NCBI GenBank assembly: GCA_044892505.1
Contig: CM097882.1
Location: 331,638,001-331,702,000, forward strand
Direction of reading: 5' to 3'
Source: Schmidtea nova
Taxonomy: Eukaryota
DNA: 64,000 bases
The position numbers and the translations under genes are program-made. The notes under the pieces are model-generated. The model was not told the DNA's origin. It did not search any database and was given only the letters and a program-made list of their open reading frames with translations. Shown piece by piece: positions 6,746-60,161 of this stretch (within the stretch, counting starts at the first letter, position 1; every line of letters begins with the position of its first letter).

Positions 6746-7303
6746 TTGGACAAGGCATGGCGTATTATCCGCAGCCTGGAGAAAGAGATGTTGCGAAAAT
6801 CCGAAAAGATAAAAGAAGCCGATGTTATGATTTCAAATTTAAAGAAGAGCTGGTTAAGTCCAGAGCAAATGAAGGCGCAAATTATCAAAAATCAACGCTC
6901 ACAGCGAGCAAACGACGAAATAAAGTTGGAACTGGATGCGACTAAGATGGAGCTGAAGAAATGCCTAAAATCAGTGACAGCTGCTTATCTCGACCAGGAG
7001 TTAAGACAACTCATCAGACCAATTACCTATCAGCATTGGGCTGAAGAGAAATCAGGATGTTCGAAAGGAACGAATACTGATGAACCATCTCAGGTTCAAG
7101 CAATAACAGCATCAAACACACCAAAAAGCGCTACAAATCCAGAAGTCAAAAAGAAGAAGAAGAGTAAGATGGGCGCGCGTCAGCGTCGATGGAAGAAGCA
7201 AGTACTTCAACAATTGGCACAACATTCAAAAGAAACTCCGGAGATCGATTTGACAATGAACTTTGTAGTTTCCGACGAAGACATTATTAAATATTTTGAA
7301 TAG
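6746..7303 (+). CDS. ORF2-family orphan protein (coiled coil, ELRxLIRPIT motif, Arg/Lys-rich segment), open frame; true start uncertain
   Basis: 185-aa ORF aligning by eye with the ORFs at 15868, 18196, 40225 and 44994. Confidence 0.8.
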   Translation: MDKAWRIIRSLEKEMLRKSEKIKEADVMISNLKKSWLSPEQMKAQIIKNQRSQRANDEIKLELDATKMELKKCLKSVTAAYLDQELRQLIRPITYQHWAEEKSGCSKGTNTDEPSQVQAITASNTPKSATNPEVKKKKKSKMGARQRRWKKQVLQQLAQHSKETPEIDLTMNFVVSDEDIIKYFE

Positions 7304-7637
7304 GGATTTTGTGATTTAGTTGTGTAAATTTTCGCTTATTAAATAATTTTTGTTTTGTATTTATTTTATTGTAAAGTATATGAAATAAAGTGATTTATTA
7401 AAGATTTAAAATAATTTAAATGAAAATATAGATTATAACTAACAATAGGATTGACATAAATATAATCTACAATAAGAGTATTAAAGAGATAACATATTAT
7501 AATTGATTAATGATTATTTGTTGATATTGTAAAGAAGGGGGCTGAAAGAAAAGTTAAAAGTTGAAACATTGTAAAGAGAAGGGGGCAGAAAGGAAAATTG
7601 AATTAAAAGATAATGAATGCGGATAGATTAAAGTAAA

Positions 7638-7888
7638 GCGTAAGTCCTTCTATCGGCAGCGAGACGAACCCGTGAACATAAATGGGGAGTAGTTTTAGCA
7701 ATAGAGCTCACCTTCCCATCATTGTTCAAACACCTTGCACATTTCCAACTCGATTATTACAGGGAAATGGTCGAAGGTGCTCGTGTGATATGTAAGCATT
7801 TTATGTTAGGTCTTGGATGGAGGAATCCCTAGAGCGTTTAATAATTGTTTTATCTTTTTGTTTTAACCCATCCAAAAACACCACAACA
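7638..7888 (+). ncRNA. 3' structured RNA module, copy A
   Basis: gcgtaagtccttctatcggcagc block; GTTTTA-GCAA-TAGAGC hairpin; TTGGATGG/CCATCCAA terminal stem. Confidence 0.7.
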
Positions 7889-8091
7889 CACTTCTAGAAC
7901 TTTAACCCTCTTCAAAATGATTGAATTTGATTCTGGTTCGGTTTGGGATACATTTACTTAGACATTATCCTTGAATAACGTAGTTTAATTTGATATTAAT
8001 AAATATATATTGATGTGATTCTTTATTTTAATCACCGATTTAAAATCTTAGTGAATGTTTACAGATTAACTATTGATTATGGGACAAATGG

Positions 8092-8316
8092 GCAATAAAC
8101 TTTCTATCGGTAGCCCTTGAACCCATTGTGATGTTCATTCAATCATAGTTTCGATTTTTCAACGCTCACTGTTTGCGAACATCCATCCATTTGTTGCATT
8201 ACCAACGTTACATTATGACGGGCAACAAGATGGGTTTGCCTAATGTTTTATGTATTGAGTTGTTGATGATGAGCCACAGCAACATCAAAGTCAGGTTGAT
8301 GGTCAACAGCCCACCA
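8092..8316 (+). ncRNA. 3' structured RNA module, subtype II (copy I), ending CCCACCA
   Basis: ctttctatcggtagccc block; CATTA-CC-AA bulged hairpin; homologous to 19520-19741 and 49065-49286. Confidence 0.65.
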
Positions 8317-8595
8317 GGTGCTTAATGACAACAGGTAAATTTTGTCTGATGACCACTTGGCTAAATGATAAATCAAGTTTACGTATAATTCACAATAATT
8401 AGTATAGAAATTCTTTTTGCTTCTCAAATATTTTTTATTATTTTAATTTTTTTGGAAAATATTTATTTTTCATATTTATAATAAACAAAATAATTTCTGT
8501 TATATCAAATCGTGTTAGTAAATGTATCCTATATTTAACACAATATTAAATAAAATATTTGTTTTAGTAAACTTTAATAGCTACATAATTGAAAG

Positions 8596-8612: not shown

Positions 8613-8661
8613 GTTAGTTTTTCAATATTGTTAAAAATATTTTAAATTAATTATCATCCAG

Positions 8662-8734
8662 TAATTTTGTATTTAAAATTGTTATTATTGGAGATGCTCA
8701 TGTCGGAAAAACCTCACTGCTTTCTCGATTTACA
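8662..8734 (+). CDS. Rab1-like exon 2 (P-loop GDAHVGKT)
   Basis: ccag|T AAT TTT GTA TTT AAA ATT GTT...TTT ACA|gttagc. Not in the ORF track. Confidence 0.9.
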
Positions 8735-15188: not shown

Positions 15189-15509
15189 ATGGCAATGCCT
15201 CTGAAGCGGAATATCCCTTCCAAGCTTGCTCGAGAAATTTTCTTAGACTACTCAGAGACGCTCATCATCTATCGCGATAGCCCCGACCATATAATCTGGT
15301 TCGGTGGGCCGGAGTGGCCAATTGACGTGGCAGATACGTCAAAGTATTTTGTCGAGACTCCAATTGATGTCGCGAGTCTCGAGATCATACAGTTCGTGGG
15401 CACCATATCGGCCGGGGAATTTCGGAAAATTGACCAAGAAATATACGACGGAGATATATATGCACCTGTTCCCGACTCACTTGAAAGCCTAATTGGAGCT
15501 GATGCATGA
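15189..15509 (+). CDS. ORF1-family orphan protein (MPLKxIP...RDxPxxIIWxGxxEWPI), open frame
   Basis: 106 aa; motif shared with the ORFs at 25043, 33028, 39434 and 45819. Confidence 0.75.
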   Translation: MAMPLKRNIPSKLAREIFLDYSETLIIYRDSPDHIIWFGGPEWPIDVADTSKYFVETPIDVASLEIIQFVGTISAGEFRKIDQEIYDGDIYAPVPDSLESLIGADA

Positions 15510-15867: not shown

Positions 15868-16290
15868 ATGTCAAACATGAACGTAGATAGGAACGATCCA
15901 GGCATAGGGATCCTAAAGAGGAGAGTTGTAGAGCTGGAAGGTACATATTTTTAACCAGCCGATATGAAGATACAACTATTCAATTTAGCCCGGATGCGAG
16001 AAGCGAATGATGACCTCAAGTTAGGGCTCGAAGTTGTCCGGATCGAGTTGAGGAAGTGTAGAAAATATATTACGGGAAGATTCGTAAGGGAAGAGCTAGA
16101 GAGCCTAATCAGACCATTAACTCTATCTGAGTGGTACCCAGAGGCCGCCGCCATTAAACACTACGAGATAGAAGTACATGGACCACCGCCGAAGAGGAAG
16201 CGGAAGAGGATTAGTTCTAAAAAACGGCAGAGATGGAAAAGACAGAGGATGGAGGAAGAAAACAAACGACTTGTGTCCGAAGACGTGTAA
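15868..16290 (+). pseudogene. ORF2-family protein with one in-frame TAA
   Basis: MSNMNVDRNDPGIGILKRRVVELEGTYF*PADMKIQ...EELESLIRPLT...KRKRKRISSKKRQRWKR. Confidence 0.75.
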
Positions 16291-16481
16291 TGCGTTGAAT
16301 GATTATAAATATATGCATTTACTTCGAGTCGAATTTTTGTTTTTATTTGATAATTTCAGCCATGGTGCGTAGTAAAGTAAGATAAGAATAACCCTAAAAT
16401 CGCGTGTTCCGCTCTAGAGTCAACCGTAGATTAGTTACACCCATAATTAGTGACCCGCGACTGGGGTGAAACGGGAATTAA

Positions 16482-16684
16482 GCAAAAGCCTTCTATTGGT
16501 TAGTAGGGAAAAATCGAGAGTAGTTTTTGTAAAGAAGCTCACCTGCCGATTCACATTCGCCTGTTTTGAACATCACCATCGTAAGTAGTTAGAGTATTTA
16601 CGGGCACATGGACAGTATGATTTTTGTGTTATATTACAACCCTAGATGAAAATAGGAATAAGAAAAACCCAATCGAAACCAGCG
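16482..16684 (+). ncRNA. 3' structured RNA module, copy B
   Basis: AATCG/CGATT stem; GTTTTT-GTAA-AGAAGC; CGTAAGTA/TATTTACG. Confidence 0.65.
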
Positions 16685-16696
16685 AATAAAACCTAG

Positions 16697-16743
16697 CCCT
16701 CGTACCCAAGATTGTCAAGCAAGAGTGAGCGTTGATCTGAGAA

Positions 16744-16814
<71 letters not shown>

Positions 16815-17920
16815 ATTGACTTCCTAAACATTTATGACGAACCGGCTGTTACATTGTTGAACGTCGTTAATTCCATTTGTGAAATAGAGTAATATAACGA
16901 GGAGGCCCGGGATGGCTAATTACTGACCAATTTTATTCGCCGAAGTTCGGGCGACTCCTAATTTTACTAAAAGGTCAAAATTTTAAATCCCAATTAAATT
17001 AAAATTATTAAGCCCAAATTACAAATACATTTAAAATTCTTTATTATTAACACCAAATTACAAATACATTTTTAAATCCCCATCAGTCACATCTAAATTT
17101 AAGGGGTGGGAATGATCGCTGGGGCCCACTACAACAATCCTAAATCCCCCCCATTAAATTTACATTTAATTTTAAATTTTTAAAAATTTTATAATAAAGT
17201 GCGGCGCTATGACCACTACAAGAAATCAGAAGGCTTACCCGCTTTTGCGTGCCACCCCCGCTCTGCTACCCGATCAAAAACCATTAAAGGGGAACTTGCA
17301 AGATTGGGATTTCAACTTTTCACCTCACCCCTCGTTCCCAAGATTGTCAAGCAAGAGTGAGCGTTGATCTGAGAATGCAATATATATATATATATATATA
17401 TGTATAAGACTGACGTCCTAAACATTTATGACGAACCGGCTGTTACATTGTTGAACGTCGTTAATTCCATTTGTGAAATAGAGTAGTGTATCGAGGAGGC
17501 CCGGGATGGCTGATTACTGACCAATTTTATTCACCGAAGTTCAGGCGACTCCTAATTTTAATAAAAGATCAAAATTTTAAATCCCAATTAAATTAAAATT
17601 ATTTAGCCCAAATTACAAATACATTTAAAATTCTTTATTATTAACACCAAATTACAAATACATTTTTAAATCCCCATCAGTCACATCTAAATTTAAGGGG
17701 TGGGAATGATCGCTGGGGCCCACTACAACAATCCTAAATCCCCCCATTAAATTTACGTTTAATTTTAAATTTTTAAAAACTTTATAATAAAGTGCGGCGC
17801 TATGACCACTACAAAAAATCAGATGGCTTACCCGCTTTTGCGTGCCCCCCCGCTCTGCTACCCGATCAAAAATCATTAAAGGGGAACTTGCAAGATTGGT
17901 ATTTCAACTTTTCACCTCAC
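16697..17920. repeat. Tandem duplication of a ~600-630 bp unit containing a TA tract
   Basis: Units start ccctcgt(a/t)cccaagattgtcaagc at 16697 and 17329 and are highly similar. Confidence 0.9.
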
Positions 17921-18195: not shown

Positions 18196-18789
18196 ATGAA
18201 CCAGGAAACAAGCCAACAAAAATAACTCGATAAAATGTGGAGGATTAAAAGGGCTCAAGAGAGGGAGCTAGAACAATTAAAGGCCCAACTGGCAAAGGTA
18301 CAAGCCCAAGTACAGTATGTAAGGAAGAGCTGGTTTGCGCTAGCCCGAATAAAAGAGCAGATAACCCGAACCAAACGGGCGCAGCTGACAGCGGATGATT
18401 ATAAAGTAGAGTGGGAGGCCACCAAAATAGAAATGAGAAAGTGCCTCCGCTCAGTGACAACTTCTTTTATCGTAAAAGAGTTGCGGTCTCAAATTAGACC
18501 TATAACATATCATAATTGGGTGACGTAAAGAAAACCGACTTGTTTAGTTGGAACCGATATAGAAGGCCTAAGTTCCACGATAGCGTCAAGTCCAGCAGAA
18601 CCTCCAAAAACAATAAGCTCCACAGGCGGAGTTAGGAAAAGGAATAGGATTGGTTCAAAGCGTAGGCGTCAAAAGAAGTTGTTTGCACAGCAACTACATG
18701 CGCAAATCGAACACCTGACGAATCTAGGCAACAACGAATTATTGGCAGAGGTTTTTTCCATGGAAGGAATTTTTGAGGAGTTTTTGTAA
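18196..18789 (+). pseudogene. ORF2-family protein with two in-frame TAA codons (copy C, 5'-truncated element ending at 19208)
   Basis: MNQETSQQK*LDKMWRI...ELRSQIRPITYHNWVT*RK...RKRNRIGSKRRRQKKLFAQQL. Confidence 0.8.
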
Positions 18790-18975
18790 ATAATAAAGTA
18801 TTCGTGAAGGTGTATCGGAGTTTTGATGTTGTTGTTCACATTTTTTCCTTTAACTTTAATGTAGCTAAAATTAAACTAAATCTGGAAAGAACTAGCAAGG
18901 GGTAGTTAATCTAGTAGAATTAAACGATAAAGAATCATTACACGGGAAATTTGTTTAATTAAAATGTAGACGATA

Positions 18976-19208
18976 GCGTAAGACCTTCTAACGGCAGCGT
19001 GAACCCGCGAAAATAAATGGGGAGTAGTTCTAGCAGTAAAACTCACCTGCCCATCATTTTTTCAACCACCCTGCGCATCACCAACTTAACTGCATAGGGA
19101 AATAGTTAAGGGCGCTCGTGTGGAAGTTGCAAATGTTTATGTATGGTCATCGGGTATCCCTAGCATAATTACGTGTTGATTGTTTTCGGCCCACCCATAA
19201 ACCCAGCA
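18976..19208 (+). ncRNA. 3' structured RNA module, copy C, ending AAACCCAGCA
   Basis: gcgtaagaccttctaacggcagc; ATGGG/CCCAT; CTTAACTG/TAGTTAAG. Confidence 0.7.
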
Positions 19209-19277
19209 TTACACATTTCAAAATGGAATAAATTCACAATAAAAATTTTTAATAATATATAAGTAATTATTTTTCGT

Positions 19278-19519
19278 TTACATGTGGTTTTTTTCAAAAC
19301 AAGGTACCACACAAAGTGGTACTTCATAGGTCGAGCACCAGTAACGTGACTCTACGAATATTATTTTTTGAACAGACTGCACATCTTCGACATATTTGCT
19401 TTCGATGATGTAGCTGGAATGAAATTGGGGAAATGTTTTCCGATGAGACGTGTAGGTTTGGAACTTTTTGTTGGTCGACCAATGTTGTTTGAAATCGGTG
19501 TATGCTGAAGTATATATTG
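19278..19519 (-). pseudogene. piggyBac transposase C-terminal Cys-rich domain fragment
   Basis: RLIGKHFPNFIP...KMCAVCSKNNIR/ESRYWCSTYEVPLCVVPCFEKNH*. Confidence 0.75.
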
Positions 19520-19741
19520 TGGTGGGTTGTTGATCGTCAATATGACCTTGACGTTGCTATGGCTCTCATCAACAACTCAACACATAAAACATTGAAATAA
19601 CCATCTTGCTACCCGTCACTATGTAACGTTGGTACTGTAACAAGTGGGTAGGTATTCGCAATCAGTGAGCGTCGTCAATACGAAACTATGATTGACCGAA
19701 TATCTCCTGTGTCCAGGGGCTACCGATAGAAGGTTTAATGC
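19520..19741 (-). ncRNA. 3' structured RNA module, subtype II (copy J)
   Basis: CCTTCTATCGGTAGC; CAATCA-TA-G..C-TCAC-TGATTG; CTTGTTA-CAGTA-CC-AA-CGTTAC/GTGACG-GG-TAGCAAG; GTTGTTGAT/ATCAACAAC. Confidence 0.7.
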
Positions 19742-20172
19742 CCATTTTTGTCCCTTCGACGATTTACCTATAAGCTTTCAATAAAAATTTTATCGGAAAT
19801 TCAACATAAACATTCTACATAATTATAAATTTATTATTGTATACAAATATATTATTCCGAGCATCAAAAACCCTAATATAACTTTATATTTTACCAATAT
19901 TGCAATTTACGATAGTTAACACATAAAATATTTTATTTTTATAGAAAAAATTTTAATCTGCATTTGAAATTTAAGAAAAACTTTAATTATTATTCTATAA
20001 ACAGTAATTTTATAAACAATAAAAATAAATTTTTCTTTTGTTTAAAATTGTTAATTTAATAAAAAGGACAAATTATCTCAATTCAAAAATCATATTGACT
20101 TTAAATGTAAGTTTTTGAATTTTTTCCCTAAATTGATTAAATAATGATTTCTAAAGCTCAGACCAACAAAAG

Positions 20173-24458: not shown

Positions 24459-25042
24459 AAAACTCAAGAAATAATGATTTTTTTTAAAATTTCATTCTTT
24501 AGCATTTCTTATTTGTTTTATGATAAATTGAGTTTTGTTTTGTTTCGACAAATAATAATAAAAAATCATTTTTTATTTATTTGCTCACTTTCATGTAATT
24601 TCAACTATGATAATTGTCCATTTCTAATCCAGGTGCCAATCCCGGGATCCCATTGATTGAAAATACAACACGGGATGGCAAACCCTACCTGGTACCCTTT
24701 TTGACTTTCGGCCTTTCTAACTCTATTTACCTTAAGTATTTACAGCTTCCCACGATGTCTTTCCATTCATTATAGTATGTTGCCTGGTTCGTTACCACAA
24801 TGAGTTAAACACATTAGAAATCTTATTTTATACAGATCCTAGTCTTGCAATTCACCTCACCCTTTATTTAAATTTTTATTTATTAATATAAAAAATTGAA
24901 TTAACAAGGCAAGAACAACAAAGATTTATAAAAATGCTTCTATTAAAATTAAATTTCGATTAACTAAACACACAAGGTTACAAAAATGTTCACGTAATCA
25001 CAAAAATTGTAATCGTCAATTGCGACGCATCTCCCAATCAGT

Positions 25043-25375
25043 TTAACTGAAGGGAGTCGGTGAATTTGTTAGGCATTGTTGATTCGAATACCAAATTGCC
25101 CATTCCGGAGAATTCGGACGACGGAATATGTCCCGTATATATTTTCTGATTGCATCCTGGCCTGTTACTTGGAATTTTACAAAATACTTTGGACAATTTG
25201 TCGGGTATTTGAAATCCACGTTGATTGGCCATTCGGCAATGCCATGCCAAATGATCTTGCCCGATCTATCTCTTTGGAGGCTAAACTTCGACTCCAAGCC
25301 CTCTCGTTGGAAAGCATCCTAGTGTTCAGTAAATATTTCCTGTGCCAGCTCCGTTAGGATTACCTTCAGTGACAT
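25043..25375 (-). pseudogene. ORF1-family protein with one TAG (copy H)
   Basis: MSLKVILTELAQEIFTEH*DAFQREGLESKFSLQRDRSGKIIWHGIAEWPINVDF...KYFVKF; start coordinate approximate. Confidence 0.75.
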
Positions 25376-25402
25376 TACAATGATAAGGTAGATTTTATAC
25401 AT

Positions 25403-33027: not shown

Positions 33028-33202
33028 CTGAGTAGCTAAAATCCATATCTATGGACCATTCAGCGCTCTAATGCCAGATAATCTCATCTGGACTGTCTCT
33101 ATGGAGACTGAAATCTGGTGAAATCCCGTACAGAGCGAAATCTTGCTGGTGCTCATTAAAAATCTTCTGAGCCAAATCGGCGGGAATCGCTTTTAACGGC
33201 AT
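33028..33202 (-). pseudogene. ORF1-family protein truncated by the adjacent hAT (copy L)
   Basis: MPLKAIPADLAQKIFNEHQQDFALYGISPDFSLHRDSPDEIIWH*SAEWSIDMDFSYS. Not in the ORF track. Confidence 0.8.
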
Positions 33203-33221
33203 TGCAATGACGAGATAATTA

Positions 33222-40224: not shown

Positions 40225-40778
40225 ATGAGCAATACAGTCAAAAACCCTCATTCCGACGAAAATCAACTCTTACGTAAACGCATAAAAGTGCTGGAAAGTC
40301 ATGTAAAGAAGCCGAAATGAGTCAACTAAAAACGACCTGGTTTCACCCCGAACGGGTCAAAGAAATCCAGCAGCACAGATACCGGGCAGAAAGAGCTTTA
40401 GAGGATCAGGCCAGTGAAACTGCCGCAGTTAAGTTAGAGCTCAATAATTACCTGCGAGCCTCCACGAGAGAATTTATTGAACAATAGTTAAAGCCGCTAA
40501 TACGTACCAGCACCTTCATCCGTTGGGCAGAGTCGATCCATGTAGCTTATGGTATGCAAATGGAAACGAGCTTTACCTCTGTGTTAGAAAGCTTAAAAGA
40601 GATTCCCAAACCGGAAGGATCGCTGCGTACGAAGCGAAGGAATCGTTTAGGTGCGAGAAGGCGTCGCGAAAGGAGAGCCTATGCCGAACGAACAGGAATC
40701 GAGGTGGATTTCTTAAGTGGGATAACCGAAAGGCAGTTGTTGGAAGTCATTAATACGGATGTTTTGTTGGGTAAATAA
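40225..40778 (+). pseudogene. ORF2-family protein with one frameshift and one TAG (copy D)
   Basis: LLRKRIKVLE / LKTTWFHPERVK...EFIEQ*LKPLIRTSTFIRWAE...KRRNRLGARRRRERRAYA. Confidence 0.8.
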
Positions 40779-40955
40779 ATGTTTAGCGTACGAAGCGTTG
40801 TTTTTGACTGAATGTGGAATGCATGGAAAATTGAGTGAATGAGTAGATGATTAAATAAACACAATTCATTTGAAGGCCGAGGGATATTACGAAAATAAAT
40901 CAACTCTAGACGTAGCGGAATCAACAAAATAAATGGGGACCGAAAAAAAACCCAC

Positions 40956-41183
40956 ACAGACCTTCTATCGGTATTGGTGGACTTGTGAATAAATGAGGGA
41001 ATAGTAGCCGCAAGGTTGCTCATCTGCCTCATCATTTCACAACGTTGATACAGTACCATCATGATGAGTAGTTAGGGACACATCATGGGTATCAGTGGGG
41101 GAAGCGTGTTTATGTTGGCGAGATTACCCTGACAATTAACATCCAATAAAATCTCAGTTGAAAAACGTACCAACAAACCAGCA
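40956..41183 (+). ncRNA. 3' structured RNA module, copy D
   Basis: ATGAGG/CCTCAT; GTAGCC-GCAA-GGTTGC; CATGATG/CATCATG; TGTTGG/CCAACA. Confidence 0.7.
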
Positions 41184-43003
41184 TAAAATAGAAAAATTTC
41201 ATAAATTCACAATTTTCGGGCATTATTGCGCAGTAGAATTTTTTCGCATTTCACGGCTGTACGTTGTATTTTTAGAAACTATTCATACTTATAGTATTAA
41301 TATTTAATTTTTGGAATCTGTTGGTAGGACATGCAAAATTACAGATATTTTGTTATGCCGGAATATTTTTTAAAACTTAAAACTTCATATATTTTTAAGG
41401 CATAGTTTAAAATTATCGTGACTGATAGCTTTGTTACCATGTCGTAGGTATTTTGATTGAGTTTCAAGTTTATTGGTAATGTGTTATTATATGATTAAAT
41501 ATGTATTTATTATTTTTTGAAGAATTATATTTTTATTTAAATTTTTACTTTTACTTTTGTTAAGATCAAAAAGATGGGGGACTGACCTTAACACAAATTG
41601 ACTCCAATTAATAAAATAAGTAAATAAATAAATAAATGAATATCTATAAATATAAAGATATTAATGTGGTTGTGTGTATTAGTATAACCTGTAAAAGAAA
41701 AACCAACTTTACTTTCAAATATTTTTATTTAAACAATTTACAAACGATATTTTATAAATCGAATATTTATACAAAAGAACAATTAAGGTTATGGATTGAA
41801 TTAATCCTTACTGTTTGTGGCAGCCTGCAAGAAATCGTTGGAACCTCAGTAGCACAACGATCGCTAAGAATTTTAACACAAGAATTTTAACAAGCAAGAG
41901 GGTATGATTTTGGGGCACCCAGAGGATACTAAAGTAAGCTACGTTACTTTGTATCCGCTTGAAAAAAAATATCTTAAAACTAAAAAGATAAATTTATCTT
42001 TCACTAAATTCACAATCTCAAAATTATTACTACTTTACAAAATCAAATTTTAAATTACTTCGCTCAGCTGTAAAATTAATCTCCGTTTTTCTCCTCGATT
42101 ATGAAAATTCCGAATGTATTTATACTACTTTTCTGATGTAGATAATCAATCAGATCTACTCAGGAAACTTAATTAATTTTCCTATGATATTCTTCTGATT
42201 TTTAAACAGATGATCTATTTTCCCTTTGATTCTGCAAATCTGGAATTTCAATTATCGTCCGTTCTCTCTCTCAGCTGTCGCCAAACGCAATACTAAATTT
42301 CTTCAAATAATTCAATTTTTTCTCCACCAACAAATTTCCAGCTTCAGTAATAATTAGATTTTTCTCCAACTGATTGTTTTCTGCTAGATTTAATTTCTTC
42401 TTTTAATTTCTTTTTTTTTTAATTTCTTCGTTCGCTAAAAAGTTGACACTTTTCCTCAGTTCTGTCGTTGCCTGAAGTCTTCTCCCAGTTTTACTGAAAC
42501 ACCATGTTATATATATTAAAAATGAAATTTGCTTACCCAAATTTAGCTACAAACAATTACTATTTAATTTCTAGCAATTACCAAAGATGACTCACTTCTA
42601 TTTTTGGTAATTGCTTTTTCTAGATAGATTATTTTAGGTTATTATTTATTTTATTTTAGCTATTTTTAGTAATTTTTTTATTTCTAATTAAGTATTATTA
42701 GTAATTTATTATTGTCAAACCTCAAGACATTAAGGCCAAAGGCCTGATCCTAACACTTTCATCACATTTTCTCCAAAATTAACATCATTATATCGTTATT
42801 CATTTATTTATATGCATATTTATATTTTTTTTCATTAAAACTATTTTTATACGTCAACCTAGTCGCTGTACCGTCATTAGTCGCTTTAGTGAATCATCAG
42901 TTCGCTGGAGGCTTTCAGTGTTCTGTTCCATATTTTCAATGAAGTAAGCGCAAACATCCAAAAACGCTTCATCTTATACTTGGCTATATGAGGAGTAGTG
43001 GAT

Positions 43004-43980: not shown

Positions 43981-44433
43981 GTATGATCGGAATTAATTTT
44001 TGTAAAAAACTATAAAATACTTTTATGTCGCAATACATAAAAATTTTAACTTGAATTATTAGATTATAATATGTGTGAATTTAAATTTTTTATTATTATA
44101 AATTTTATAGAATTTCAAATTTGGTCATAAAAATAAAATTTACCTTTATAGATAATATATTATGAAAAAATTAGGATATAAAAGTTATAAATCAAAAATT
44201 TTCTTAGAATAAAAAAATTATAAATCGAAAATAGTATAATATAAAATTTTAAATCAAGAATTTTATTATGATATTGAATATAAAAATTAGGAATTTGGAA
44301 TTTTATTATTATATAAATTTTATGAAATTGTAAATTTAAAATTTTGTAAGAAAAATTACAAAGATAATTGTTGTCATTTTAATAATTAAAATTTAATTCT
44401 AAAAATTATTTTTTATAAATAAATAAATAAATA

Positions 44434-44673
44434 TGATGGGGTTGTGGATGGGTTTGTAAAAAACATATGTTTGAATTGTTGCGTTCTAGGATCTCTCACC
44501 CACAGCCTTGCATAAACTGATCGTCAACACGCGTATGCCCTTGACTATTCCCTATTAGCCAAGTTGGTACTGCATACGGTGGTGGAAAAATGATGGGCAG
44601 ATGAGCTCTTTTACCAGAACTACTCCCCATTTATCTTCCCTCGGGTTCGTGCTGCCGATAGAAGGTCTTACGC
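44434..44673 (-). ncRNA. 3' structured RNA module, copy E
   Basis: Nearly identical to copy F over ~150 nt; TGTGGGTG/CATCCACA terminal stem. Confidence 0.7.
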
Positions 44674-44993
44674 ATAACAATTTTATTTCTATTCGTCCCA
44701 ATATGTTAAATTTAATCTTAAATCTTTGTGCACCTCCATTGTCTGAAAACGCTTTCTAATAAAACTTTCGTACTTTACTTTAGGTTGTTAATTTTATCTT
44801 GCGCATAATTCAATCGACTTCGCTGTGATCGTTATTTATGTGCAATTTATGAGGAAAAATGTTACCTAAATTATTTATTTAGTTTTGTTTAATTTAGAAT
44901 GAATAATTTTTTCGAGGAGAGACAATACCAAACTAAATCAGTTACTCATTAACTCGAAAAATATTTTATTTTAGACACAGCAACTTCAACATT

Positions 44994-45578
44994 TTATTTC
45001 ATAAAATCCAAGTCGATTTCGTCCATCAGTTCTAATTTTGTTAACGCGCTTAATCGATCTATCTGCATATTCATCCGCTTGGCAAATTCTCGGCGACGAC
45101 GTCTTTGTCGCGATCCTAATCGGGTTTTTCGGGTTTGATGGATCATCCTTGCAGGAAGTTCTGGTTTTGGTTGGATATCGTGGGGTGTGGAGGAAATGTC
45201 CACGACCGGGCTCGGTTCCATGTTATGATCGTTCTCGGTTCCTGTTGCAATTTCCCGATATTGACCCTCTGTCCATCGCCGGGCTGTAATTGGGCGAATC
45301 AGTGCCCGCAATTCGCTATCAATATAGCTTTTCGTCACGGAATTTAGGCAATTTCGTAGTTCCCTTTGTACGGCATCCAGCTCCGTCTTGGTTTCGGCCA
45401 AAGCTTCCTGCATTTTAGCCATTTTCGACAGTTGAGTTTTCATTTGATCTGGAGAAAACCAACGAGTCTGAAGTTCTTCATTTGCGACCCTGAGTCGCTT
45501 GATCTGTCGTTTTTGGTCTCTCATTTTTCGTTCTTGGACTTGATTGGTAAATTCCCTGGACTTTTCGATGGAATTCAT
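44994..45578 (-). CDS. ORF2-family orphan protein, intact 194 aa
   Basis: ATG to stop open; WFSPDQMK, ELRNCLNSVT, ELRALIRPIT, RLGSRQRRRRREFA. Confidence 0.85.
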   Translation of the reverse strand: MNSIEKSREFTNQVQERKMRDQKRQIKRLRVANEELQTRWFSPDQMKTQLSKMAKMQEALAETKTELDAVQRELRNCLNSVTKSYIDSELRALIRPITARRWTEGQYREIATGTENDHNMEPSPVVDISSTPHDIQPKPELPARMIHQTRKTRLGSRQRRRRREFAKRMNMQIDRLSALTKLELMDEIDLDFMK

Positions 45579-45818: not shown

Positions 45819-46238
45819 TCACTCCATGGACAATTTTCCCCGATAGGAAAAGATAGCACGGATTTGCAGGTTGGTTTTGAATCCATTTGAGGGGTTGGTG
45901 GAATCCTTCTTGCTCTCTCTGAGCGGTCTGATCGCGACATTATAAATGATGCTCAGTTCCTTAAACGTTGAGGCGGAAATGTAGCCCCAATAAATGACGA
46001 AGTTTGGGAATCCATTCTCGTCCAGCATCAGGACGAACCACTCCAAGTGCCAGGGTTCGAAATCATCGCCCGGAATTATGGGCCAATTGGCGCATCCTCG
46101 ATACCACACATGGTGCCGTGGGTGATCCCACACGGTGAAGGGAAATGCTGTGTCCAACTCCCTTCTCCAGGCCCACATTTTCAGATGGACCTGCTGAATG
46201 ATTTCGAATGGAGCGCGTTTTAGGGGGCTGATCCGCAC
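45819..46238 (-). CDS. ORF1-family orphan protein; the frame stays open about 100 nt upstream to a splice acceptor near 46340
   Basis: PLKRAP...VWDHPRHHVWYRGCANWPI...EWFV...YWGYISA. Confidence 0.7.
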   Translation of the reverse strand: MRISPLKRAPFEIIQQVHLKMWAWRRELDTAFPFTVWDHPRHHVWYRGCANWPIIPGDDFEPWHLEWFVLMLDENGFPNFVIYWGYISASTFKELSIIYNVAIRPLRESKKDSTNPSNGFKTNLQIRAIFSYRGKLSME

Positions 46239-47639: not shown

Positions 47640-49064
47640 ATAAATACCCCTCATGATATCACAAAATAATTATACACCCAAATTTGCAAAACAATACATC
47701 CATACTATTCATTAACACCATCCATACCTAATACCACATACAAAATTTATTTAACTATAATACACACACACTACATTATATCACTCATTAACAGCCATCA
47801 GTAACTCACATCCAGAAAATCTCCACAAGCACTCACAACAATCACTTCCATTATTTAAATTGCCTATTGCATTAATATCATCGCATACATACAATCACCT
47901 ACATTCACATACAGTTGTCACAACGAAAACTCACAATAACCCATAAAAGTATATGAACATATCAATTTTCCATTATTACACCGTAAATCTCGCATGAAAA
48001 TTCACACCTCCATCTCACTCAACTATCTCTCATACAACATTTTACATCCAAATAGTCCCCGTAGTAATCCTTCTATCTTGCGCCATCAGCACATCATTCA
48101 AAACATCCGACATTTATTCTACAGTACATTTCTAGAGGAGTGATTTAAATCACTTTATAGATGTTATTAGTAGGAATTCAAAAGGTGTTGGTCATGAAAT
48201 AAGTTTTCTAGTCTTAGGACTAGAATAATCCATCTATAGATCAAATAGTTTGATCAAGCAAATCCGCAAGAACTAAGAATGGTGGAAACATATCATCTAT
48301 CCTTGAATATAACAAAATTTTCCCAGCGTGGGTATCATCAAACTAGCAAAATAGAGTAGAAGGAAAACAAAAAATTCACCAAATTTTTATTAATAATCGT
48401 AAAGGAATGAAATTGCAAATTAGTCCAAATTTTATTAGAACCCGTGAAGGGAACAGGTAGAACTTTGCCGGATTCCGACACATCTTCTCTTCGGAGCTTT
48501 CTAAAATTGATTAGATAAATAATAATTATTAAATAAATATTAATTATTAAATAACCTTTTAACAGAACTGTCAGTTCTGTTTTGCGTGTGATTGAATTCG
48601 TCTGTTGGTATATTTTTCCGTGTTTGTCGACGGTGCCAGCCTGTTGTTCGTCTGGTCTTTGTAGTGCTTGTTGAGTGGAGTGGTTTGTGGTGCTTATCTT
48701 ACTTTTGATATCTTATTCGAATTAAGTTTTTCCTTGAATATTTCCTTGATTTAGTAATTTTAAACAAGGAATTTTTTATTTCCTAATTTAATAATAAAGT
48801 TTCTATTGATAAAATGAAAATTAAAGTTTTAAAATTTTAAATGTAGATTAAAAATTATTTTAAAAATTATTTTATTTATTAATTATCATAAATTGTAATA
48901 TTTGCAAAATTTAATGTTTTGTTAGCGTTTTGATGTTCTGAAAGATCAATGTAACCGTAAATTTATATTGATGTAGATTACTTATTTTAAATTGGTCATT
49001 GAAAATCTTATTTAATGCTTGTAGATAGAAATTGAATACTTGTGGATAAAAGGGACAAAAATGG

Positions 49065-49286
49065 GCATTAAACCTTCTATCGGTAGCCCTTGGACCCAGG
49101 AGATATTCGGTCAATCATAGTTTTGAATTTTCGACACTCACTGATTGCGAATACCCACACATTTGTTACATTAACAACGTTACATTGTGACAGTCAACAA
49201 GATGGTTAATCCAATGTTTTGTATATTGAGTTGTTGATATGAGCCATAGCAACGTCAAGGTCATATTTACGATCAACAACCCACCA
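49065..49286 (+). ncRNA. 3' structured RNA module, subtype II (copy K)
   Basis: Homologous to J and I; TATTCG/CGAATA and GTTGTTGAT/ATCAACAAC stems. Confidence 0.68.
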
Positions 49287-52140
49287 GTTATTTTGAATAA
49301 AAAATAAGATGATATCGATGTAAGTTGAAAAAAATCCGTTATATATATATATATATATGTTTATGAAATAGTGAAAAAACATGAATTTGTTTTTGTCGGA
49401 AATATATTTAACATTAATTTACCTGAATTGTTCAAAAATGAAAATCCCAATGATGTAGGTATATATTAACAGAAGTAACATTGCACGACAATTGTTAACA
49501 AGAAAATATACAATTAAAAATTACTAGTAGACTTGCAGACTATACTGTATTTACTCAAAGGGTGCCGCTTATTTTAAATAGTCAACACTGCTGCTTATCA
49601 AATCTTATTATTCTGTCGATCTAGTAAGCTTTTGTAGTTAATCGTTTCTAGTTAGTAATTTAAATAATTTCGCTCATTAAAATTTGGCAAATGTCACAAT
49701 AAATTTGATGATTTTTATAGTCTTAGGGGGCCCATCAGCTATCTATGTAGGCGCGTGATTGACACTTATCGAAAAAATACCTTGTCCCTGTATTTCCAAT
49801 GCAAATTTTATAACCAATCTACGACCCATCAGGTGATTTATTTCCTCGCAAATACTTTTAGACAGATATGATGCTTTTTACTAGTATTGCTCAACTTCGA
49901 TCTGCATTGCTCTAAAAATGTGTCAAACTTCACCATGAGCTCCAAAATGCCCATTTGGTTATTGATTGTAACGTTCCGCGGAGGACATTGAAGTATAAAT
50001 ACTTAATAAGGGGTTGTGATCTGTGTTATTCTTGTGTTCTGGTACTCGAATATGACAATTTATCCAATCACTAAGCCAATTTCTAAACCCAGACTCCTGA
50101 CAACTAAATAATCTATAACAAAGACAAAATACCTCGCCCAATGAAAGCGAACCATTTCTTTTTGTTGGGCTGGTACAATCCAGTTTTACAACAAATATCA
50201 GCACGATAATAGGGAAATCAGTACAATAATAAAAAATAATTAAATATAAATAAAACTTCTTCATAGACATGTGTAAATCCGATTGTCTGAATTTAAAGGA
50301 GAGTAGTCGAGGTAACGCACCTCACCTGTTCTCTAATTCCAAAAGCCCTCATACACAGTTCCAACGTAATTATCGAGAATGATTACGTGTTTACAGACAA
50401 AAGATGGTTAATTTTCTTGCTTTTTTCATTTTTTAAAATTTTTTCTTAGTTTGATGGTAGATTGAAAGCCTAGACACAATATTTGAGTAATTCTACCACA
50501 ACTAGACCAACACCTTTTTACAATTTCTTTGTTGAATAAAGGTCGTGCCTAAATATCGCTTCTGCTTCTTATCAATCATCTCGGAAGCGTCAAAATTTCC
50601 TATTTTTGCTGAATTGGTAGATTCATTTTAAACTCACGTACAATATCGTCAATAATTTTTCAGTTTGGAAGATTTTTCTCAAACGCTTTTTATTCGATGC
50701 AAAGCTGGACGGCAGATTCTGCAAAAGATAAAACGACGGAGGTGATCGCCTTAGATTGTTCAGCTCAAGCAGCCTCTTCTTCAAGTTCTATTTTCTGTTG
50801 TGCCTTCCTCGTCGTCAAAATGGCTGTAAACTGCTGGCGTTTGTACAAAGAAAGTTATTAATTTCGGAATGCTCAACTGTTCTGCAGATTGTATTTTTCA
50901 CTTTTTAACCCCCTTCTTATCATACACCCCTTCTATCATACAGCATATATGAAACACTCTTTTATTAGGCCCTAAATGAGAAACGGCTTGGTAAATGTAT
51001 TATTAATGAAAATATTATAAAATAAAATTTATCAGCAATATTTAAAAAGTAATTTAAATAAAATATAGATAGAAATTGAAGCTTAAAATAAAATATCAAT
51101 CAATAGTTCAATATAATCCATCAAATTAGTTACAATTATGCGAAAAAATTTACGTGTTACTTTTCTTCTCATTTCGTCCTGTCCGTTGTAATGTTTAAAT
51201 AAGATTATGATAGTGTCCGTTTAGTGATTATGCCGTTGTTAACAAACCCACAATATTCCGAAAACGAAAAGGATGGTAAGATGATTAATCGTGAACAGTA
51301 CAACGTTTTTCAATGATGATCACATGATCGCCAAATGTATCTATAAAATGTCGGCTTTTCATTTATACATCTGCTACACTTCTTGTTAATTGTTCTTAAG
51401 CTACTTGCCAGTATTAGCTATCACTTTCAGCTATTTTACATCATTAAAACTTATGCATCTGTAGTGTTCTTTCGCTCCTTTAGTTAATTTCAAAAAATTA
51501 TCAATTTAGTCCCTATAAAATATTTAATACGATTTTGGGTGCTCCTTCCAAACTTTACCTTAATGGCTATTTCTCCATTGTCAATAAGTAGTAAAATGAA
51601 AATTTGTGTATGATTGTAGTTATACTTGTTTAATAAAAATTGTAATTTAAGTAATAAAATGTTAAAAAACTTAAAATATATTAGTTAATAAATTCTAAAA
51701 ATTCAAAAAATTAATCAATTTATATATTAAAAAACTCATTATTAGAATTTGAGGAACGTTTATTAGAAGTCTCAATTTTATAATTAAAATTACTTTTGTT
51801 CCATATTTTATTAAGTCGGTTGTGAATTATTTATTAAATTATAATAATATATGTCCTTGTTCTCTTTTCAGATCATATCTGACCGAATTTGTATCAGACA
51901 TGTAACTAGTATAACGTATACCAACATAACTCATACTTTTACATTCTAAACACATCATAATATGCATTATTCCAAAATTTAAAAATTGTTTTCTTAATCA
52001 TCATTTTTTATAACAAAAATAGCTTTGGTTGATAATAGATATTTTATATTATAACTTTTTAAAATAAATTTTAAACAAACAAATATGGTTATAGATACCA
52101 TAAGATATTTTCATTTTTATGAGACTAGATCAGGGTGCTC

Positions 52141-58491: not shown

Positions 58492-59854
58492 TGTTGGGCT
58501 GGTGAAATCAAAAATAAATTTAATTAAAAATTATTAAAAATTAAATACATACAAAAAGAAACAAAGAGAAACGCACGACAAGACGTTAAGCAGTAAAATA
58601 ACGCAAGGGAAAATAAAAACAGTTAAGTACAATAGTAGTCATACGAACCGCATCCTTTAAGTCGGTCAAGATAGGGTTGAAGCGATAAAAAAGAGGAATC
58701 TCAAAAGAGAGCACACAATTTGAGTGCAGGTCGGATTTACACACGAAGGACCGCACGAGAATTGAATGTGGAAGATCAGTGCTTGTAAAGTGATTATGAA
58801 AAGCATGATCAAAGAATAAAATCGGTATCAGAATAAAGAAAATAATTTATTAAAAATTATAGAATAAATCCCCATTGAAATATCGCAAAATTAACAGAGA
58901 TAGGAATGTAAATAGATTTAAAATTAAATTGTTTTAATCAATAAATGCACAATAAAACAATAGATACACACCTAATTTAATATAATAAATATTTTCGAAA
59001 ATAAATAAATCAAATTATAAAGTTAAATTTATGAAAGATAAATAAATGCTCACTTATTAAAACTAATAAGTGAGTTAAAATCATTAATAAATTATGTAAA
59101 TAACAAAATATGTAAGTGTCAGTGAAATTAGTATAAATAGATATTGAAAAATCACAATCAAAACTTACTTGGCATTAATTTACTGAAAGCAAAAATTTGG
59201 TTTTGATTTCGCCAGTCGTGTGGATCGATTTTAAGCAGGTATTTTTGTTATTTTGGTGATATGTGTTGGGTCAATTGTTGTTCAATGGTCACAATAAAGT
59301 TTTGAGGCTAAATCTTTGCTTAAGGGATTCCCGATTAAAATCTGAATAGGGGCGTCCCTCTGTGGTGCAATCCACGAGGGTGAATCCGTGGCTGTGGAGC
59401 TCAGTAGTTCCACGTCATGGTGAGTGACTAAATTATTAAAACTAGAATAGTAAATAATTTGTAAGGGCGGCGAATGCACACGGGATATTCTAAGTACGAA
59501 TGTACACCAAATGTTTTATTAGTTACGAATACACATAGGTAGTTAGTTGTGGTCAACCACCAAGTCACGTAGGATATGGTTATTAAATTGAGAGCTAGAG
59601 ATCGAGCGAAATTTAAGTCGACGGATATAAAGAATCAAGCGTAAGACCTTCTATCGGCAGCACGAACCCGAGGGGAAAATAAATGGGGAGTAGTTTTGGT
59701 GACGGAGCTCACCTGCCCATCATTTTTCCACACCGTATGCAGTACCAACTTGGCTAATAGGGAATAGTCAAGGGCATACGCGTGTATTAGTCATTTTATG
59801 TAAGGTTATGGGTGCGGAATCCCTAGTATTTAAAACCCACCCATAAACCCAGCA
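58492..59854 (+). mobile_element. TG..CA element copy F (1363 bp, no recognisable ORF1/ORF2)
   Basis: TAAA|TGTTGGGCTG...AAACCCAGCA|TAAA; TATAAATA at 59132; complete 3' module. Confidence 0.85.
59639..59854 (+). ncRNA. 3' structured RNA module, copy F
   Basis: GTTTTG-GTGA-CGGAGC; CTTGGCTA/TAGTCAAG; TATGGGTG/CACCCATA. Confidence 0.72.
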
Positions 59855-60161
59855 TAAACATGAACGATAATATTTTTTTCAAACATTAATTCCTCGACCT
59901 GTGTGGTAGTTACGTTCTGAAAAAAGAGCGCGCAAACCAAAACGCGTACTGAACCCACTTTTGTAATAAATTTGAAGAATACGTTCCAAATTTTAAATTT
60001 ATAATAAAAAATTTAATTATAAGTACATAGTTCAAATAAAGTCTTTAAGATTTCGGTCCTCTATCCACAAGTTTAGCAATTTTTCTATTACAAAATTTCG
60101 AATTTTTTTGTGGTTTTTGAAGATAATGGTGTAGAACGGGCAACTGAACGTTTCATTTATA

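What the first reader, a model, noticed from the sequence alone, without database searches (positions are those of the whole stretch)
19520..19741. A second element subtype with an apparently unrelated interior ends in a homologous RNA module
Seen in I (8092-8316), J (minus) and K (49065-49286): the same 5' block GCaTtAAACCTTCTATCGGTAGC...G(G/A)ACCC, the same TA / TCAC internal loop (CAATCA-TA-G...C-TCAC-TGATTG), and the same bulged domain (CAGTA-CC-AA in J, identical to E and F). There is a terminal stem GTTGTTGAT/ATCAACAAC and an inner hairpin that covaries (CGTCAA/TTGACG vs CATCAA/TTGATG). The domain-3 loop is only 3-5 nt, so the kissing loop appears absent. Inference: termini plus RNA are the functional core and the interiors are exchangeable cargo.
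Basis: partly seen in the sequence, partly recalled or inferred. Interest (0 to 1): 0.8.

Follow-up and report, generated by a model that had tools for sequence, protein, structure and literature searches.

The report
Shared folded RNA end of repeats
A previously uncatalogued, roughly 230-base folded RNA module occurs ten times in this AT-rich animal-like DNA, sometimes behind an orphan helical protein gene and sometimes behind non-coding leader, and is most likely the shared 3' recognition end of a family of mobile repeats.

Summary
Copies I (8088-8316 +), J (19520-19745 -) and K (49061-49286 +) are 82-89% identical. They carry the 5' block, the TA/TCAC internal loop, the bulged domain, the 9-bp terminal stem and the covarying inner hairpin as described.

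A covariance model trained only on five subtype-I cores scores J at 45.5, I at 38.7 and K at 17.7 bits, while nothing else in the window exceeds 8.8 bits. A sequence-only profile gives the same copies just 8-14 bits, so shared structure carries most of the signal.

A joint model finds exactly ten modules in the window (100-166 bits; next best 13.5). Across them 88-90% of predicted pairs form, against 32-51% when partners are slid. Compensatory changes occur in 20 of 28 or 30 of 46 pairs.

Five modules lie 190-330 nt downstream of an orphan 108-194 aa coiled-coil, arginine-rich ORF. That ORF has no relative among 1.84 billion protein representatives. No Rfam family matches, and the window holds no reverse transcriptase, LTR or TIR.

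Best reading (about 0.45): the shared 3' recognition end of retroposon-like elements, with coding and non-coding members. "Exchangeable cargo" is only partly supported.

The parts
19520..19745 (-). Module J (subtype II), the finding itself: core plus terminal hairpin plus CCCACCA tail
   Evidence: CM R1, trained without it, gives 45.5 bits; R2 gives 118.9 bits. Terminal stem is 9 bp.
19746..20085 (-). AT-rich non-coding leader of J, shared with K; the 5' limit is approximate
   Evidence: 72% identity to the K leader; 18% GC, no ORF.
8088..8316 (+). Module I (subtype II)
   Evidence: R1 gives 38.7 bits; R2 gives 107.7 bits.
7997..8087 (+). Short leader of I: only about 91 nt are shared with the J/K leader, and upstream of it similarity is background
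49061..49286 (+). Module K (subtype II), the most decayed of the three
   Evidence: R1 gives 17.7 bits; R2 gives 100.2 bits.
48720..49060 (+). AT-rich leader of K; the 5' limit is approximate
7635..7884 (+). Module M1 (subtype I), downstream of ORF-B1
   Evidence: Terminal stem is 8 bp.
6746..7303 (+). ORF-B1, 185 aa, open: coiled-coil hairpin plus arginine-rich C-terminal helix
16479..16690 (+). Module M3, a divergent subtype I copy first found by the model; core 16479-16633, terminal domain unclear
   Evidence: 60.6 bits; 107.9 bits.
15955..16290 (+). ORF-B3, 108 aa from its ATG, open but lacking about 40 N-terminal residues relative to B1 and B7
18973..19209 (+). Module M4 (subtype I), tail to tail with J, 311 nt apart
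18226..18786 (+). ORF-B4, broken by one in-frame stop; no frameshift seen
40950..41184 (+). Module M6, a divergent subtype I copy
   Evidence: (120.4 bits).
40278..40775 (+). ORF-B6, broken by one in-frame stop; no frameshift seen
44433..44676 (-). Module M7 (subtype I), downstream of ORF-B7
44994..45578 (-). ORF-B7, 194 aa, open, ATG start
50245..50510 (+). Module M9, a divergent copy with a degenerate 5' block and no ORF-B upstream; core 50245-50422, with a putative terminal stem and C/A-rich tail after it
   Evidence: 31.6 bits; 102.3 bits.
59636..59855 (+). Module M10 (subtype I), with no ORF-B upstream; similarity to M7 begins at the first base of the module
45819..46238 (-). ORF-A7, 139 aa, upstream of ORF-B7; it may belong to the element but the link is weak
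   Evidence: Similarity to ORF-A3 is only E about 1e-3 pairwise.
15189..15509 (+). ORF-A3, 106 aa, upstream of ORF-B3; similar fragments elsewhere are not followed by ORF-B or a module, so membership is uncertain

Best explanation
The 226-229 nt stretch at 19520-19745 (-) is one of ten copies of a structured RNA module. The folded strand is the sense strand of the neighbouring ORF.

Anatomy of the module:
- a long-range closing helix;
- a conserved, largely unpaired 5' block;
- two composite arms, one holding the invariant TA/TCAC internal loop and one holding the CAGTACCAAC-type bulge;
- a terminal hairpin of variable size;
- a short C/A-rich single-stranded tail, at which similarity between copies ends.

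I read the module as the cis-acting 3' end of a family of retroposon-like mobile elements.
- Some members ('subtype I') are mRNA-like and encode ORF-B, an orphan coiled-coil protein with an arginine-rich C-terminal helix. I infer that ORF-B binds its own RNA.
- Other members ('subtype II': I, J, K) are about 570-nt non-coding riders that keep only an AT-rich leader and the module.
- In this reading the module and tail are what a copying enzyme, supplied in trans, recognises in order to start copying at the 3' end. That would explain why the module outlasts everything upstream of it.

Shown: the copies, the structure, its covariation, the strand, the common 3' boundary, the unequal 5' extents, the ORF linkage, and the absence of known relatives.

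Inferred: RNA-mediated copying, recognition by a trans-acting enzyme, and ORF-B binding to the module.
For: (1) Real structured RNA.
- The structure-blind MAFFT alignment of 8 copies has 90% of cells paired, against 32-51% with partners slid. Compensatory changes occur in 20 of 28 pairs, and 0 of 500 shuffles reach the observed values.
- The model-based alignment of all 10 copies has 87.9% paired, against 34-43% slid, with compensatory changes in 30 of 46 pairs.

(2) Both subtypes share the architecture.
- The subtype-I-only model scores J, I and K at 45.5, 38.7 and 17.7 bits.
- A sequence-only profile gives the same copies 13.9, 7.9 and 12.4 bits; 300 shuffles of each copy reach at most 3.1 bits.

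(3) Folded strand. Paired cells hold 54 G.U against 20 A.C, and this is the ORF-B sense strand.

(4) Not coding. Stops occur in all six frames across the copies.

(5) Defined common 3' end. I, J and K all stop at CCCACCA with unrelated flanks. M4 and M10 both stop at AAACCCAGCAT and then diverge.

(6) Unequal 5' extents on a common 3' end.
- M10 has 0 nt upstream.
- I has 91 nt, against about 340 nt in J and K.
- Five copies have at least 900 nt including ORF-B.

(7) The module is kept better than its surroundings.
- In subtype II it is 82-89% identical, against 65-72% for the leader.
- In subtype I it is 74-91% nt identical, while ORF-B is 31-40% aa identical and the spacers are unalignable.

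(8) Module and ORF-B diverge roughly in parallel, with the 40.9-kb pair (B6 with M6) the most distant in both.

(9) The copies lie in both orientations among transposon debris.

(10) ORF-B is real coding sequence. Two open frames of 185-194 codons stand in 30% GC DNA and are homologous at protein level only. The predicted fold is a helical hairpin, a disordered linker and a C-terminal helix that carries the arginine-rich stretch.
Against: - All 405 open segments of at least 45 aa in the window were scanned and none matches a reverse transcriptase, endonuclease or integrase.
- Every recognisable transposon fragment in the window is class II.
- Target-site duplications are not convincing in this AT-rich DNA.
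- There is no poly(A) or regular microsatellite tail, apart from an (ATTT)n run after M7.
- No two copies are younger than about 91% identity, so recent activity is not shown.
- The 5' ends of the ORF-bearing members could not be defined.
- Only one 64-kb window was available. The scans of viral, metagenome and prokaryote collections gave only chance matches.
Confidence: 0.45

Rival explanations
1. Host gene family. ORF-B genes are a lineage-specific family of helical proteins. The module is their conserved structured 3' UTR, acting in localisation, stability or translation control. I, J, K, M9 and M10 would be gene remnants that lost the ORF.
For: - Three of five ORF-B copies are open although they are only 31-40% identical, as for old paralogues under selection.
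- There are no TE hallmarks such as TIR, LTR, TSD or a polymerase gene.
- Module and ORF diverge in parallel.
Against: - Half of the modules have no ORF-B within 2 kb.
- Three independent copies end at exactly the same base with unrelated flanks. Segmental duplication would not produce that.
- Copies lie in both orientations among transposon debris.
- ORF-B has no relative in 1.84 billion protein representatives.
- M7 and M10 are about 91-93% identical only from the module edge onward.
Confidence: 0.2
2. Stand-alone non-coding RNA genes. Each module is its own transcription unit. The conserved 90-340 nt leader of I, J and K would be its promoter. ORF-B is a neighbouring partner gene whose arginine-rich helix binds the RNA to form an RNP of unknown role.
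For: - The leader is conserved in all three subtype-II copies directly upstream of the module.
- M10 has the module alone.
- Many invariant unpaired nucleotides suggest protein or tertiary contacts.
Against: - No Rfam family matches, even at E up to 10.
- No consistent terminator-like T-run follows the tail (read directly).
- Subtype-I copies share no upstream motif.
- Leader identity is lower than module identity and full of indels.
Confidence: 0.12
3. Self-processing or otherwise catalytic RNA. The module is a new large ribozyme-like fold that cuts or is cut at its 5' edge. That would release a module-only RNA and explain copies such as M10 that begin exactly at the module.
For: - A sharp identity boundary lies at the first base of the module in the M7/M10 pair.
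- A multi-helix junction carries invariant unpaired blocks.
Against: - None of the self-cleaving ribozyme families in Rfam matches.
- The idea rests on one pair only.
- No pseudoknot or active-site-like covariation could be demonstrated.
- Subtype II keeps a leader in front of the module.
Confidence: 0.08
4. DNA-level signal. The fold forms in single-stranded DNA of a rolling-circle or other DNA transposon, as at a Helitron end. On this view the interiors are captured cargo.
For: - Only class II transposon debris is recognisable in the window.
- G.T pairs are tolerated in DNA hairpins.
- A terminal hairpin sits close to a defined end.
Against: - There is no Rep/helicase ORF.
- The ends are not of the Helitron type: no CTRR-like 3' end was read.
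- There are no TIRs.
- A 170-nt covarying multi-helix core is far more than any known DNA-transposon end signal.
Confidence: 0.07

Closest known systems
LINE/SINE partners that share a 3' tail (stringent-type recognition, for example eel UnaL2 and UnaSINE1); from established knowledge, not tested here
   Same: - Coding and non-coding repeats carry the same 3'-terminal RNA structure, and similarity ends at a common 3' boundary.
- The 5' extents differ between copies.
- The 3' part is better kept than the rest.
   Different: - No partner encoding a reverse transcriptase was seen.
- The shared part is a multi-helix RNA of about 230 nt, rather than one short stem-loop plus repeats.
- There is no microsatellite or poly(A) tail, and no demonstrable target-site duplications.
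Internally deleted non-autonomous derivatives that keep only the structured ends of their parent (R2 SIDE elements, ingi/RIME); from established knowledge
   Same: The structured RNA end survives while the interior is lost or replaced. This is exactly the pattern of I, J, K and M10 against the ORF-B-bearing copies.
   Different: - Those derivatives share both ends with a known autonomous parent and have a specific target.
- Here no 5' end is shared and the parent is unknown.
- Subtype II is an old separate clade, not a recent deletion product.
HeT-A of Drosophila telomeres and half-L1 (HAL1) elements: retroposons that encode only a Gag/ORF1-like protein and borrow the polymerase; from established knowledge
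   Same: A single structural, coiled-coil-type ORF is followed by a long non-coding 3' region, and the element has no polymerase gene.
   Different: - ORF-B matches no Gag, ORF1 (Transposase_22) or zinc-knuckle family.
- It has no relatives at all.
- The elements here are much shorter, and neither a telomeric nor an L1 context is evident.
Arginine-rich-motif proteins paired with a large structured response element on their own RNA (retroviral Rev/RRE, Rex/RxRE or Rec/RcRE type); the protein I had in mind is Rev, and no letters are given
   Same: A small oligomerising helical protein with an arginine-rich helix is encoded upstream of a multi-stem RNA element of 200-350 nt on the same transcript.
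   Different: - No retroviral genes or LTRs are present.
- No search tool returned any homology.
- Binding is untested.
- The likeness is one of design only.
Non-autonomous Helitrons: termini conserved, interiors captured
   Same: A hairpin lies near a defined 3' end, and the upstream sequences are heterogeneous.
   Different: - There are no Helitron-type termini and no Rep/helicase gene.
- The conserved part is a large covarying RNA-like fold with strand-specific G.U pairs.

Membership tests
Any Rfam 15 family (4227 models, including all catalogued small ribozymes, snRNAs, SRP, RNase P/MRP and tRNA-like elements) | Score at or above the family's gathering threshold | tested here: not met
   (whole window, 0 matches). 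(7400-8500 at E up to 10: only chance snoRNA/miRNA fragments, none on a module as a whole).
tRNA-derived SINE / tRNA-like structure | A recognisable tRNA cloverleaf | tested here: not met
   ARAGORN finds no tRNA or tmRNA in the window. The subtype-II tail does end in ...ACCA after a 9-bp stem, but the subtype-I tails do not.
LINE/SINE system with shared 3' tail | The same 3'-terminal sequence and structure in coding and non-coding members | tested here: met
LINE/SINE system with shared 3' tail | An autonomous partner encoding reverse transcriptase (and endonuclease) with that tail | tested here: not met
   no RVT, Exo_endo_phos or related family in any of 405 open segments of at least 45 aa. 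This covers only these 64 kb; the rest of the genome could not be searched.
LINE/SINE system with shared 3' tail | Target-site duplications flanking copies | tested here: inconclusive
   Reading the flanks of I, J, K and M10 shows only 5-6 nt AT-rich matches, no better than chance.
LINE/SINE system with shared 3' tail | A common 3' end with variable 5' truncation | tested here: met
   upstream extent is 0 nt for M10, 91 nt for I and about 340 nt for J and K. The copies belong to different lineages, so this is not a strict nested series.
LINE/SINE system with shared 3' tail | A poly(A) or simple-repeat 3' tail | tested here: not met
   only M7 is followed by an (ATTT)n run.
TIR DNA transposon / MITE | Terminal inverted repeats | tested here: not met
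   only low-complexity AT-rich inverted matches. The reverse complement of the 3' tail is absent from the 5' limits.
LTR retrotransposon / TRIM | Flanking long direct repeats | tested here: not met
Helitron | A Rep/helicase gene or Helitron-type termini with a short subterminal hairpin | tested here: not met
   (no such domains). The termini read are not of that type.
L1-type ORF1p / retroelement Gag | A match to Transposase_22, zinc-knuckle or Gag families | tested here: not met
   (Pfam, E up to 0.1: only sub-threshold coiled-coil noise). (no PDB sequence or fold match).
Delta-antigen-like protein of circular RNA agents (considered because of size, coiled coil and basic motifs) | Sequence or fold match to the delta antigen family | tested here: not met
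   nothing returned.
Arginine-rich-motif protein with cognate RNA element | An arginine-rich helix in the protein and specific binding to the element | not testable with these tools
   The arginine-rich stretch is present in B1, B3 and B7 and lies in a predicted helix. Binding cannot be computed.

The most novel reading that the evidence does not exclude
The module is a new class of large structured RNA, of ribozyme or RNP-scaffold complexity, that propagates as a discrete unit. It travels with its own co-evolving arginine-rich protein or alone, and can be joined to unrelated upstream sequence at a precise 5' edge. That would make it a polymerase-less RNA-protein genomic parasite, or a new cellular RNP family.
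Probability: 0.18. Interest if true: 0.85.

Novelty: new variant of a known kind. Interest (0 to 1): 0.6.

Why it matters
If the reading is right, this RNA signal, rather than any gene, is the conserved and selected unit of a repeat family. The signal is large, covaries strongly and is absent from Rfam. It sits next to a protein with no relatives in 1.84 billion sequences.

The window would supply a ready-made alignment for a new RNA family. It would also be a test case for how non-coding riders share a recognition structure with coding elements. Finally, the module gives a handle for annotating otherwise invisible repeats in AT-rich animal genomes.

If the host-gene rival is right instead, this is an unusually large conserved 3' UTR structure in a fast-evolving gene family, which is also worth knowing.

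Tried and rejected
- Rfam, at gathering thresholds over the whole window and at relaxed E-values over 7400-8500: nothing.
- ARAGORN: nothing.
- Pattern scans of viral contigs, metagenome contigs and prokaryote genomes: 11, 8 and 3 loci. None scores with the covariance models beyond the seed letters themselves, so these are chance matches.
- ORF-B:
  - word search: none;
  - exhaustive profile search of 1.84 billion representatives: none;
  - exact look-up: none;
  - PDB by sequence and by fold: none;
  - Pfam: only sub-threshold coiled-coil noise.
- I translated an open antisense frame of the module to fish for module-bearing contigs in the protein collection. It found nothing.
- Source organism: a neighbouring IS1595-like transposase has a 90% identical protein on a 1.4-kb ENA metagenome contig. 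That names no organism.
- LTR or TIR search around two elements: only AT-rich noise.
- Shared promoter or 5' end upstream of the ORF-B copies: none.
- Similarity between subtype-II leaders and subtype-I spacers: none significant.
- The 'kissing loop' idea: I looked by eye for pairing between the long domain-3 loop of subtype I and the conserved 5' block. At best I found 4-6 pairs with G.U, not conserved in all copies, so it is neither supported nor excluded.
- ORF-A as part of the element: only a weak A3/A7 similarity, and A3-like fragments occur elsewhere without ORF-B or a module. Left as uncertain.
- The masked N runs (1119-1304, 1499-1689) were left alone.
These were the arginine-rich motif of a retroviral export protein, the tRNA-gene B box and the start of a primer-binding site. 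I used them only as leads.

Full report
WHAT THE WINDOW IS. The 64 kb are about 30% GC and hold only 18 ORFs of at least 100 aa. There are no tRNA genes and no Rfam match. I scanned all 405 six-frame open segments of at least 45 aa against Pfam. The only hits were:
- class II transposon debris: Tc1-type DDE_3, piggyBac, an IS1595-like transposase, a hAT dimerisation domain and DUF4371;
- exons of a Ras-family GTPase.

This is animal-like, intron-bearing, transposon-rich DNA. I could not name the organism. Two masked N runs (1119-1304, 1499-1689) were left untouched.

THE OBSERVATION. Reading searches confirms that I (8088-8316 +), J (19520-19745 -) and K (49061-49286 +) are one family.
- They share the 5' block. 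The 18-mer is exact in J and K and has one mismatch in I (8 window matches within 3 mismatches against 0.04 expected).
- They share the TA/TCAC internal loop.
- J carries the CAGTACCAAC bulge, identical to the copies at 44.6 and 59.7 kb.
- They share a 9-bp terminal stem.
- The inner hairpin shows one G-C to A-U double change in I.
- All three end at CCCACCA, after which identity falls to 25-45%, the background level.

The small corrections are that J reads GGACAC in the second block, K's inner hairpin has one mismatch, and I's terminal stem has two G.U pairs.

I built a covariance model (R1) from the cores of five subtype-I copies only (alignment A5). I searched the window plus 151 kb of unrelated loci with it.

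| Copy | R1 score (bits) | E-value |
|---|---|---|
| J | 45.5 | 4e-10 |
| I | 38.7 | 3e-8 |
| K | 17.7 | 0.016 |

- In the window-only search K has E = 0.005.
- The best non-module hit in the window scores 8.8 bits.
- The best hit in unrelated DNA scores 15.3 bits. It lies on contigs that had been fetched precisely because they contain the 16-mer.
- The model also revealed two copies that I had not seen: 16479-16633 (60.6 bits) and 50245-50422 (31.6 bits).
- A sequence-only profile of the same five copies gives J, K and I only 13.9, 12.4 and 7.9 bits over partial stretches. That is still above 300 dinucleotide shuffles of each copy, whose maximum is 3.1 bits. Most of the signal that links the subtypes is therefore structural.
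- A joint model (R2) run without filters finds exactly ten modules at 100-166 bits. The next best hit is 13.5 bits.

THE STRUCTURE.
- On a structure-blind MAFFT alignment of eight copies, the RNAalifold helices have 90% of cells paired, against 32-51% when the 3' partners are slid. Twenty of 28 pairs show changes on both sides, and 0 of 500 shuffles reach the observed values.
- On the model-fitted alignment of all ten copies the figures are 87.9% paired against 34-43% slid, with compensatory changes in 30 of 46 pairs and 0 of 500 shuffles.
- The helices that flank the invariant TA/TCAC loop and the bulged domain have different letters in the two subtypes but keep pairing. Helix 4, for example, is 96.9% paired and all seven of its pairs show double changes.
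- Within I, J and K alone the support is weaker because there are only three sequences. There, 95.7% of cells are paired and five pairs show double changes; 17-21 of 500 shuffles reach the observed values.
- Paired cells contain 54 G.U against 20 A.C. The folded strand is therefore the one given, which is the sense strand of the adjacent ORF.
- No reading frame stays open across the copies, so the module is not an exon.
- After the core comes a terminal hairpin. Its 8-9 bp stem is clear in M1, M7, M10, I, J and K, with different letters in each lineage. The stem is ambiguous in M3, M4, M6 and M9.
- A short C/A-rich tail follows the hairpin, and similarity between copies ends there.
- J on its own folds only modestly better than shuffles (z = -1.6). 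The case rests on covariation, not on energy.

WHAT THE MODULES ARE ATTACHED TO. Five modules (M1, M3, M4, M6, M7) lie 190-330 nt downstream of homologous ORFs, which I call ORF-B.
- B1 (185 aa) and B7 (194 aa) are open.
- B3 (108 aa) is open but N-terminally shorter.
- B4 and B6 each carry one in-frame stop and show no frameshift.
- The proteins are only 22-40% identical, while the modules are 52-91% identical. The two diverge roughly in parallel.

ORF-B is predicted as a long helical hairpin, a disordered linker and a C-terminal helix that carries an arginine-rich stretch. It has no relatives in any search:

| Search | Result |
|---|---|
| Pfam | sub-threshold noise only |
| Word search | none |
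| Exhaustive profile search, 1.84 billion representatives | none |
| PDB by sequence | none |
| PDB by fold | none |

The spacers between ORF-B and the module are AT-rich and unalignable. No shared upstream motif exists.

An upstream ORF-A is present in two elements, but its homology is marginal. Similar fragments occur elsewhere without ORF-B or a module.

Subtype II has no ORF. J and K share an 18% GC leader of about 340 nt at 72% identity. I shares only the last 91 nt of that leader. M9 and M10 have no ORF-B upstream. M10 is about 91-93% identical to M7 from the first base of the module, with unrelated sequence immediately before it.

INTERPRETATION. The facts to explain are these:
- a large RNA-level structure on the sense strand;
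- a common, precise 3' boundary;
- unequal 5' extents;
- better conservation of the module than of anything upstream;
- coding and non-coding carriers;
- both orientations, amid transposon debris.

These are the signature of retroposon families whose copying starts at a recognised 3' RNA structure. Known examples are LINE/SINE pairs with shared tails, R2 with its SIDE derivatives, ingi/RIME, and Gag-only elements such as HeT-A. I name these from established knowledge; they were not tested here. I therefore read the module as that kind of cis signal, and ORF-B as an RNA-binding structural protein of the coding members.

This reading is inferred, and I put it at about 0.45. The reasons for caution are:
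- the window contains no reverse transcriptase at all;
- target-site duplications are unconvincing;
- there is no simple-repeat tail;
- the copies are old.

The rivals are a host gene family with a structured 3' UTR (0.2), stand-alone RNA genes forming an RNP with ORF-B (0.12), a self-processing RNA (0.08) and a DNA-level transposon signal (0.07).

Homology of the module across subtypes is supported. 'Exchangeable cargo' is only partly supported, for three reasons. Subtype II is an old separate clade of the module (45-58% identity to subtype I). No shared 5' terminus was found. The M7/M10 boundary can be read as truncation as easily as recombination.

The short domain-3 loop of subtype II is real. 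Whether the long loop of subtype I makes a tertiary contact could not be settled.

COMPARISON AND NOVELTY. Neither the RNA nor the protein has any catalogued relative, so the family is new. Its design, a shared structured 3' end in coding and non-coding repeats, is a known one, hence 'new variant of a known kind'. It fails the defining tests for Rfam families, tRNA-like elements, TIR and LTR elements, Helitrons, and known Gag/ORF1 or delta-antigen-like proteins (see the membership table). For the LINE/SINE design it meets the shared-tail and 5'-truncation features. It does not meet the polymerase-partner feature within these 64 kb.

LIMITS. All evidence comes from a single window. The searches of viral, metagenome and prokaryote collections returned only chance hits, and no eukaryote genome collection was available.

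The places of the two ORF breaks are deliberately not listed.

I declare one slip.

Noticed in passing
window 60169-60334 and 61209-61374: Two 166-bp arms, 98% identical and in inverted orientation about 1.2 kb apart. This looks like a young TIR-type DNA transposon or MITE just downstream of module M10.
   Followed up: no
window 43004-43981: A 490-bp unit duplicated in tandem at 99% identity, about 450 bp beyond the 3' end of module M7.
   Followed up: no
window 16697-17920: Two tandem units of about 600-630 bp, 90-96% identical, each starting next to a long (TA)n run. They lie between element 3 (ORF-B3 plus M3) and ORF-B4.
   Followed up: no
window 10527-11219 (-): A 230-aa ORF with an IS1595/ISXO2-like transposase domain. 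A 90% identical 313-aa protein sits on a 1.4-kb contig of ENA metagenome assembly ERZ14207112, so DNA of a close relative of the source is present in that sample.
   Followed up: partly
window 8651-8746 (+): An open segment with a P-loop typical of a Ras/Rab-type GTPase first exon, about 330 bp downstream of module I. Three other open segments match the Pfam Ras family, but I did not locate them.
   Followed up: partly
window 25041-25495 (-) and 33071-33241 (-): Fragments similar to ORF-A3 (15189-15509) that are not followed by ORF-B or a module. ORF-A3 may therefore belong to a different repeat from the one studied.
   Followed up: partly
window 7884-7997 and 19209-19520: Twice a subtype-II copy lies within 113-311 nt of the 3' end of a subtype-I module: once in the same orientation (M1 then I) and once tail to tail (M4 and J). 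K lies about 960 nt upstream of M9. Whether this clustering is chance, insertion preference or a composite unit is open.
   Followed up: partly
window 326-1040: An AT-rich array of diverged direct repeats of about 200-270 bp (69-78% identity) next to the masked N runs.
   Followed up: no
window 4378-4781 versus 43032-42755 and 41557-41432: Another dispersed repeat family, 71-84% identical and in inverted orientation, unrelated to the modules.
   Followed up: no
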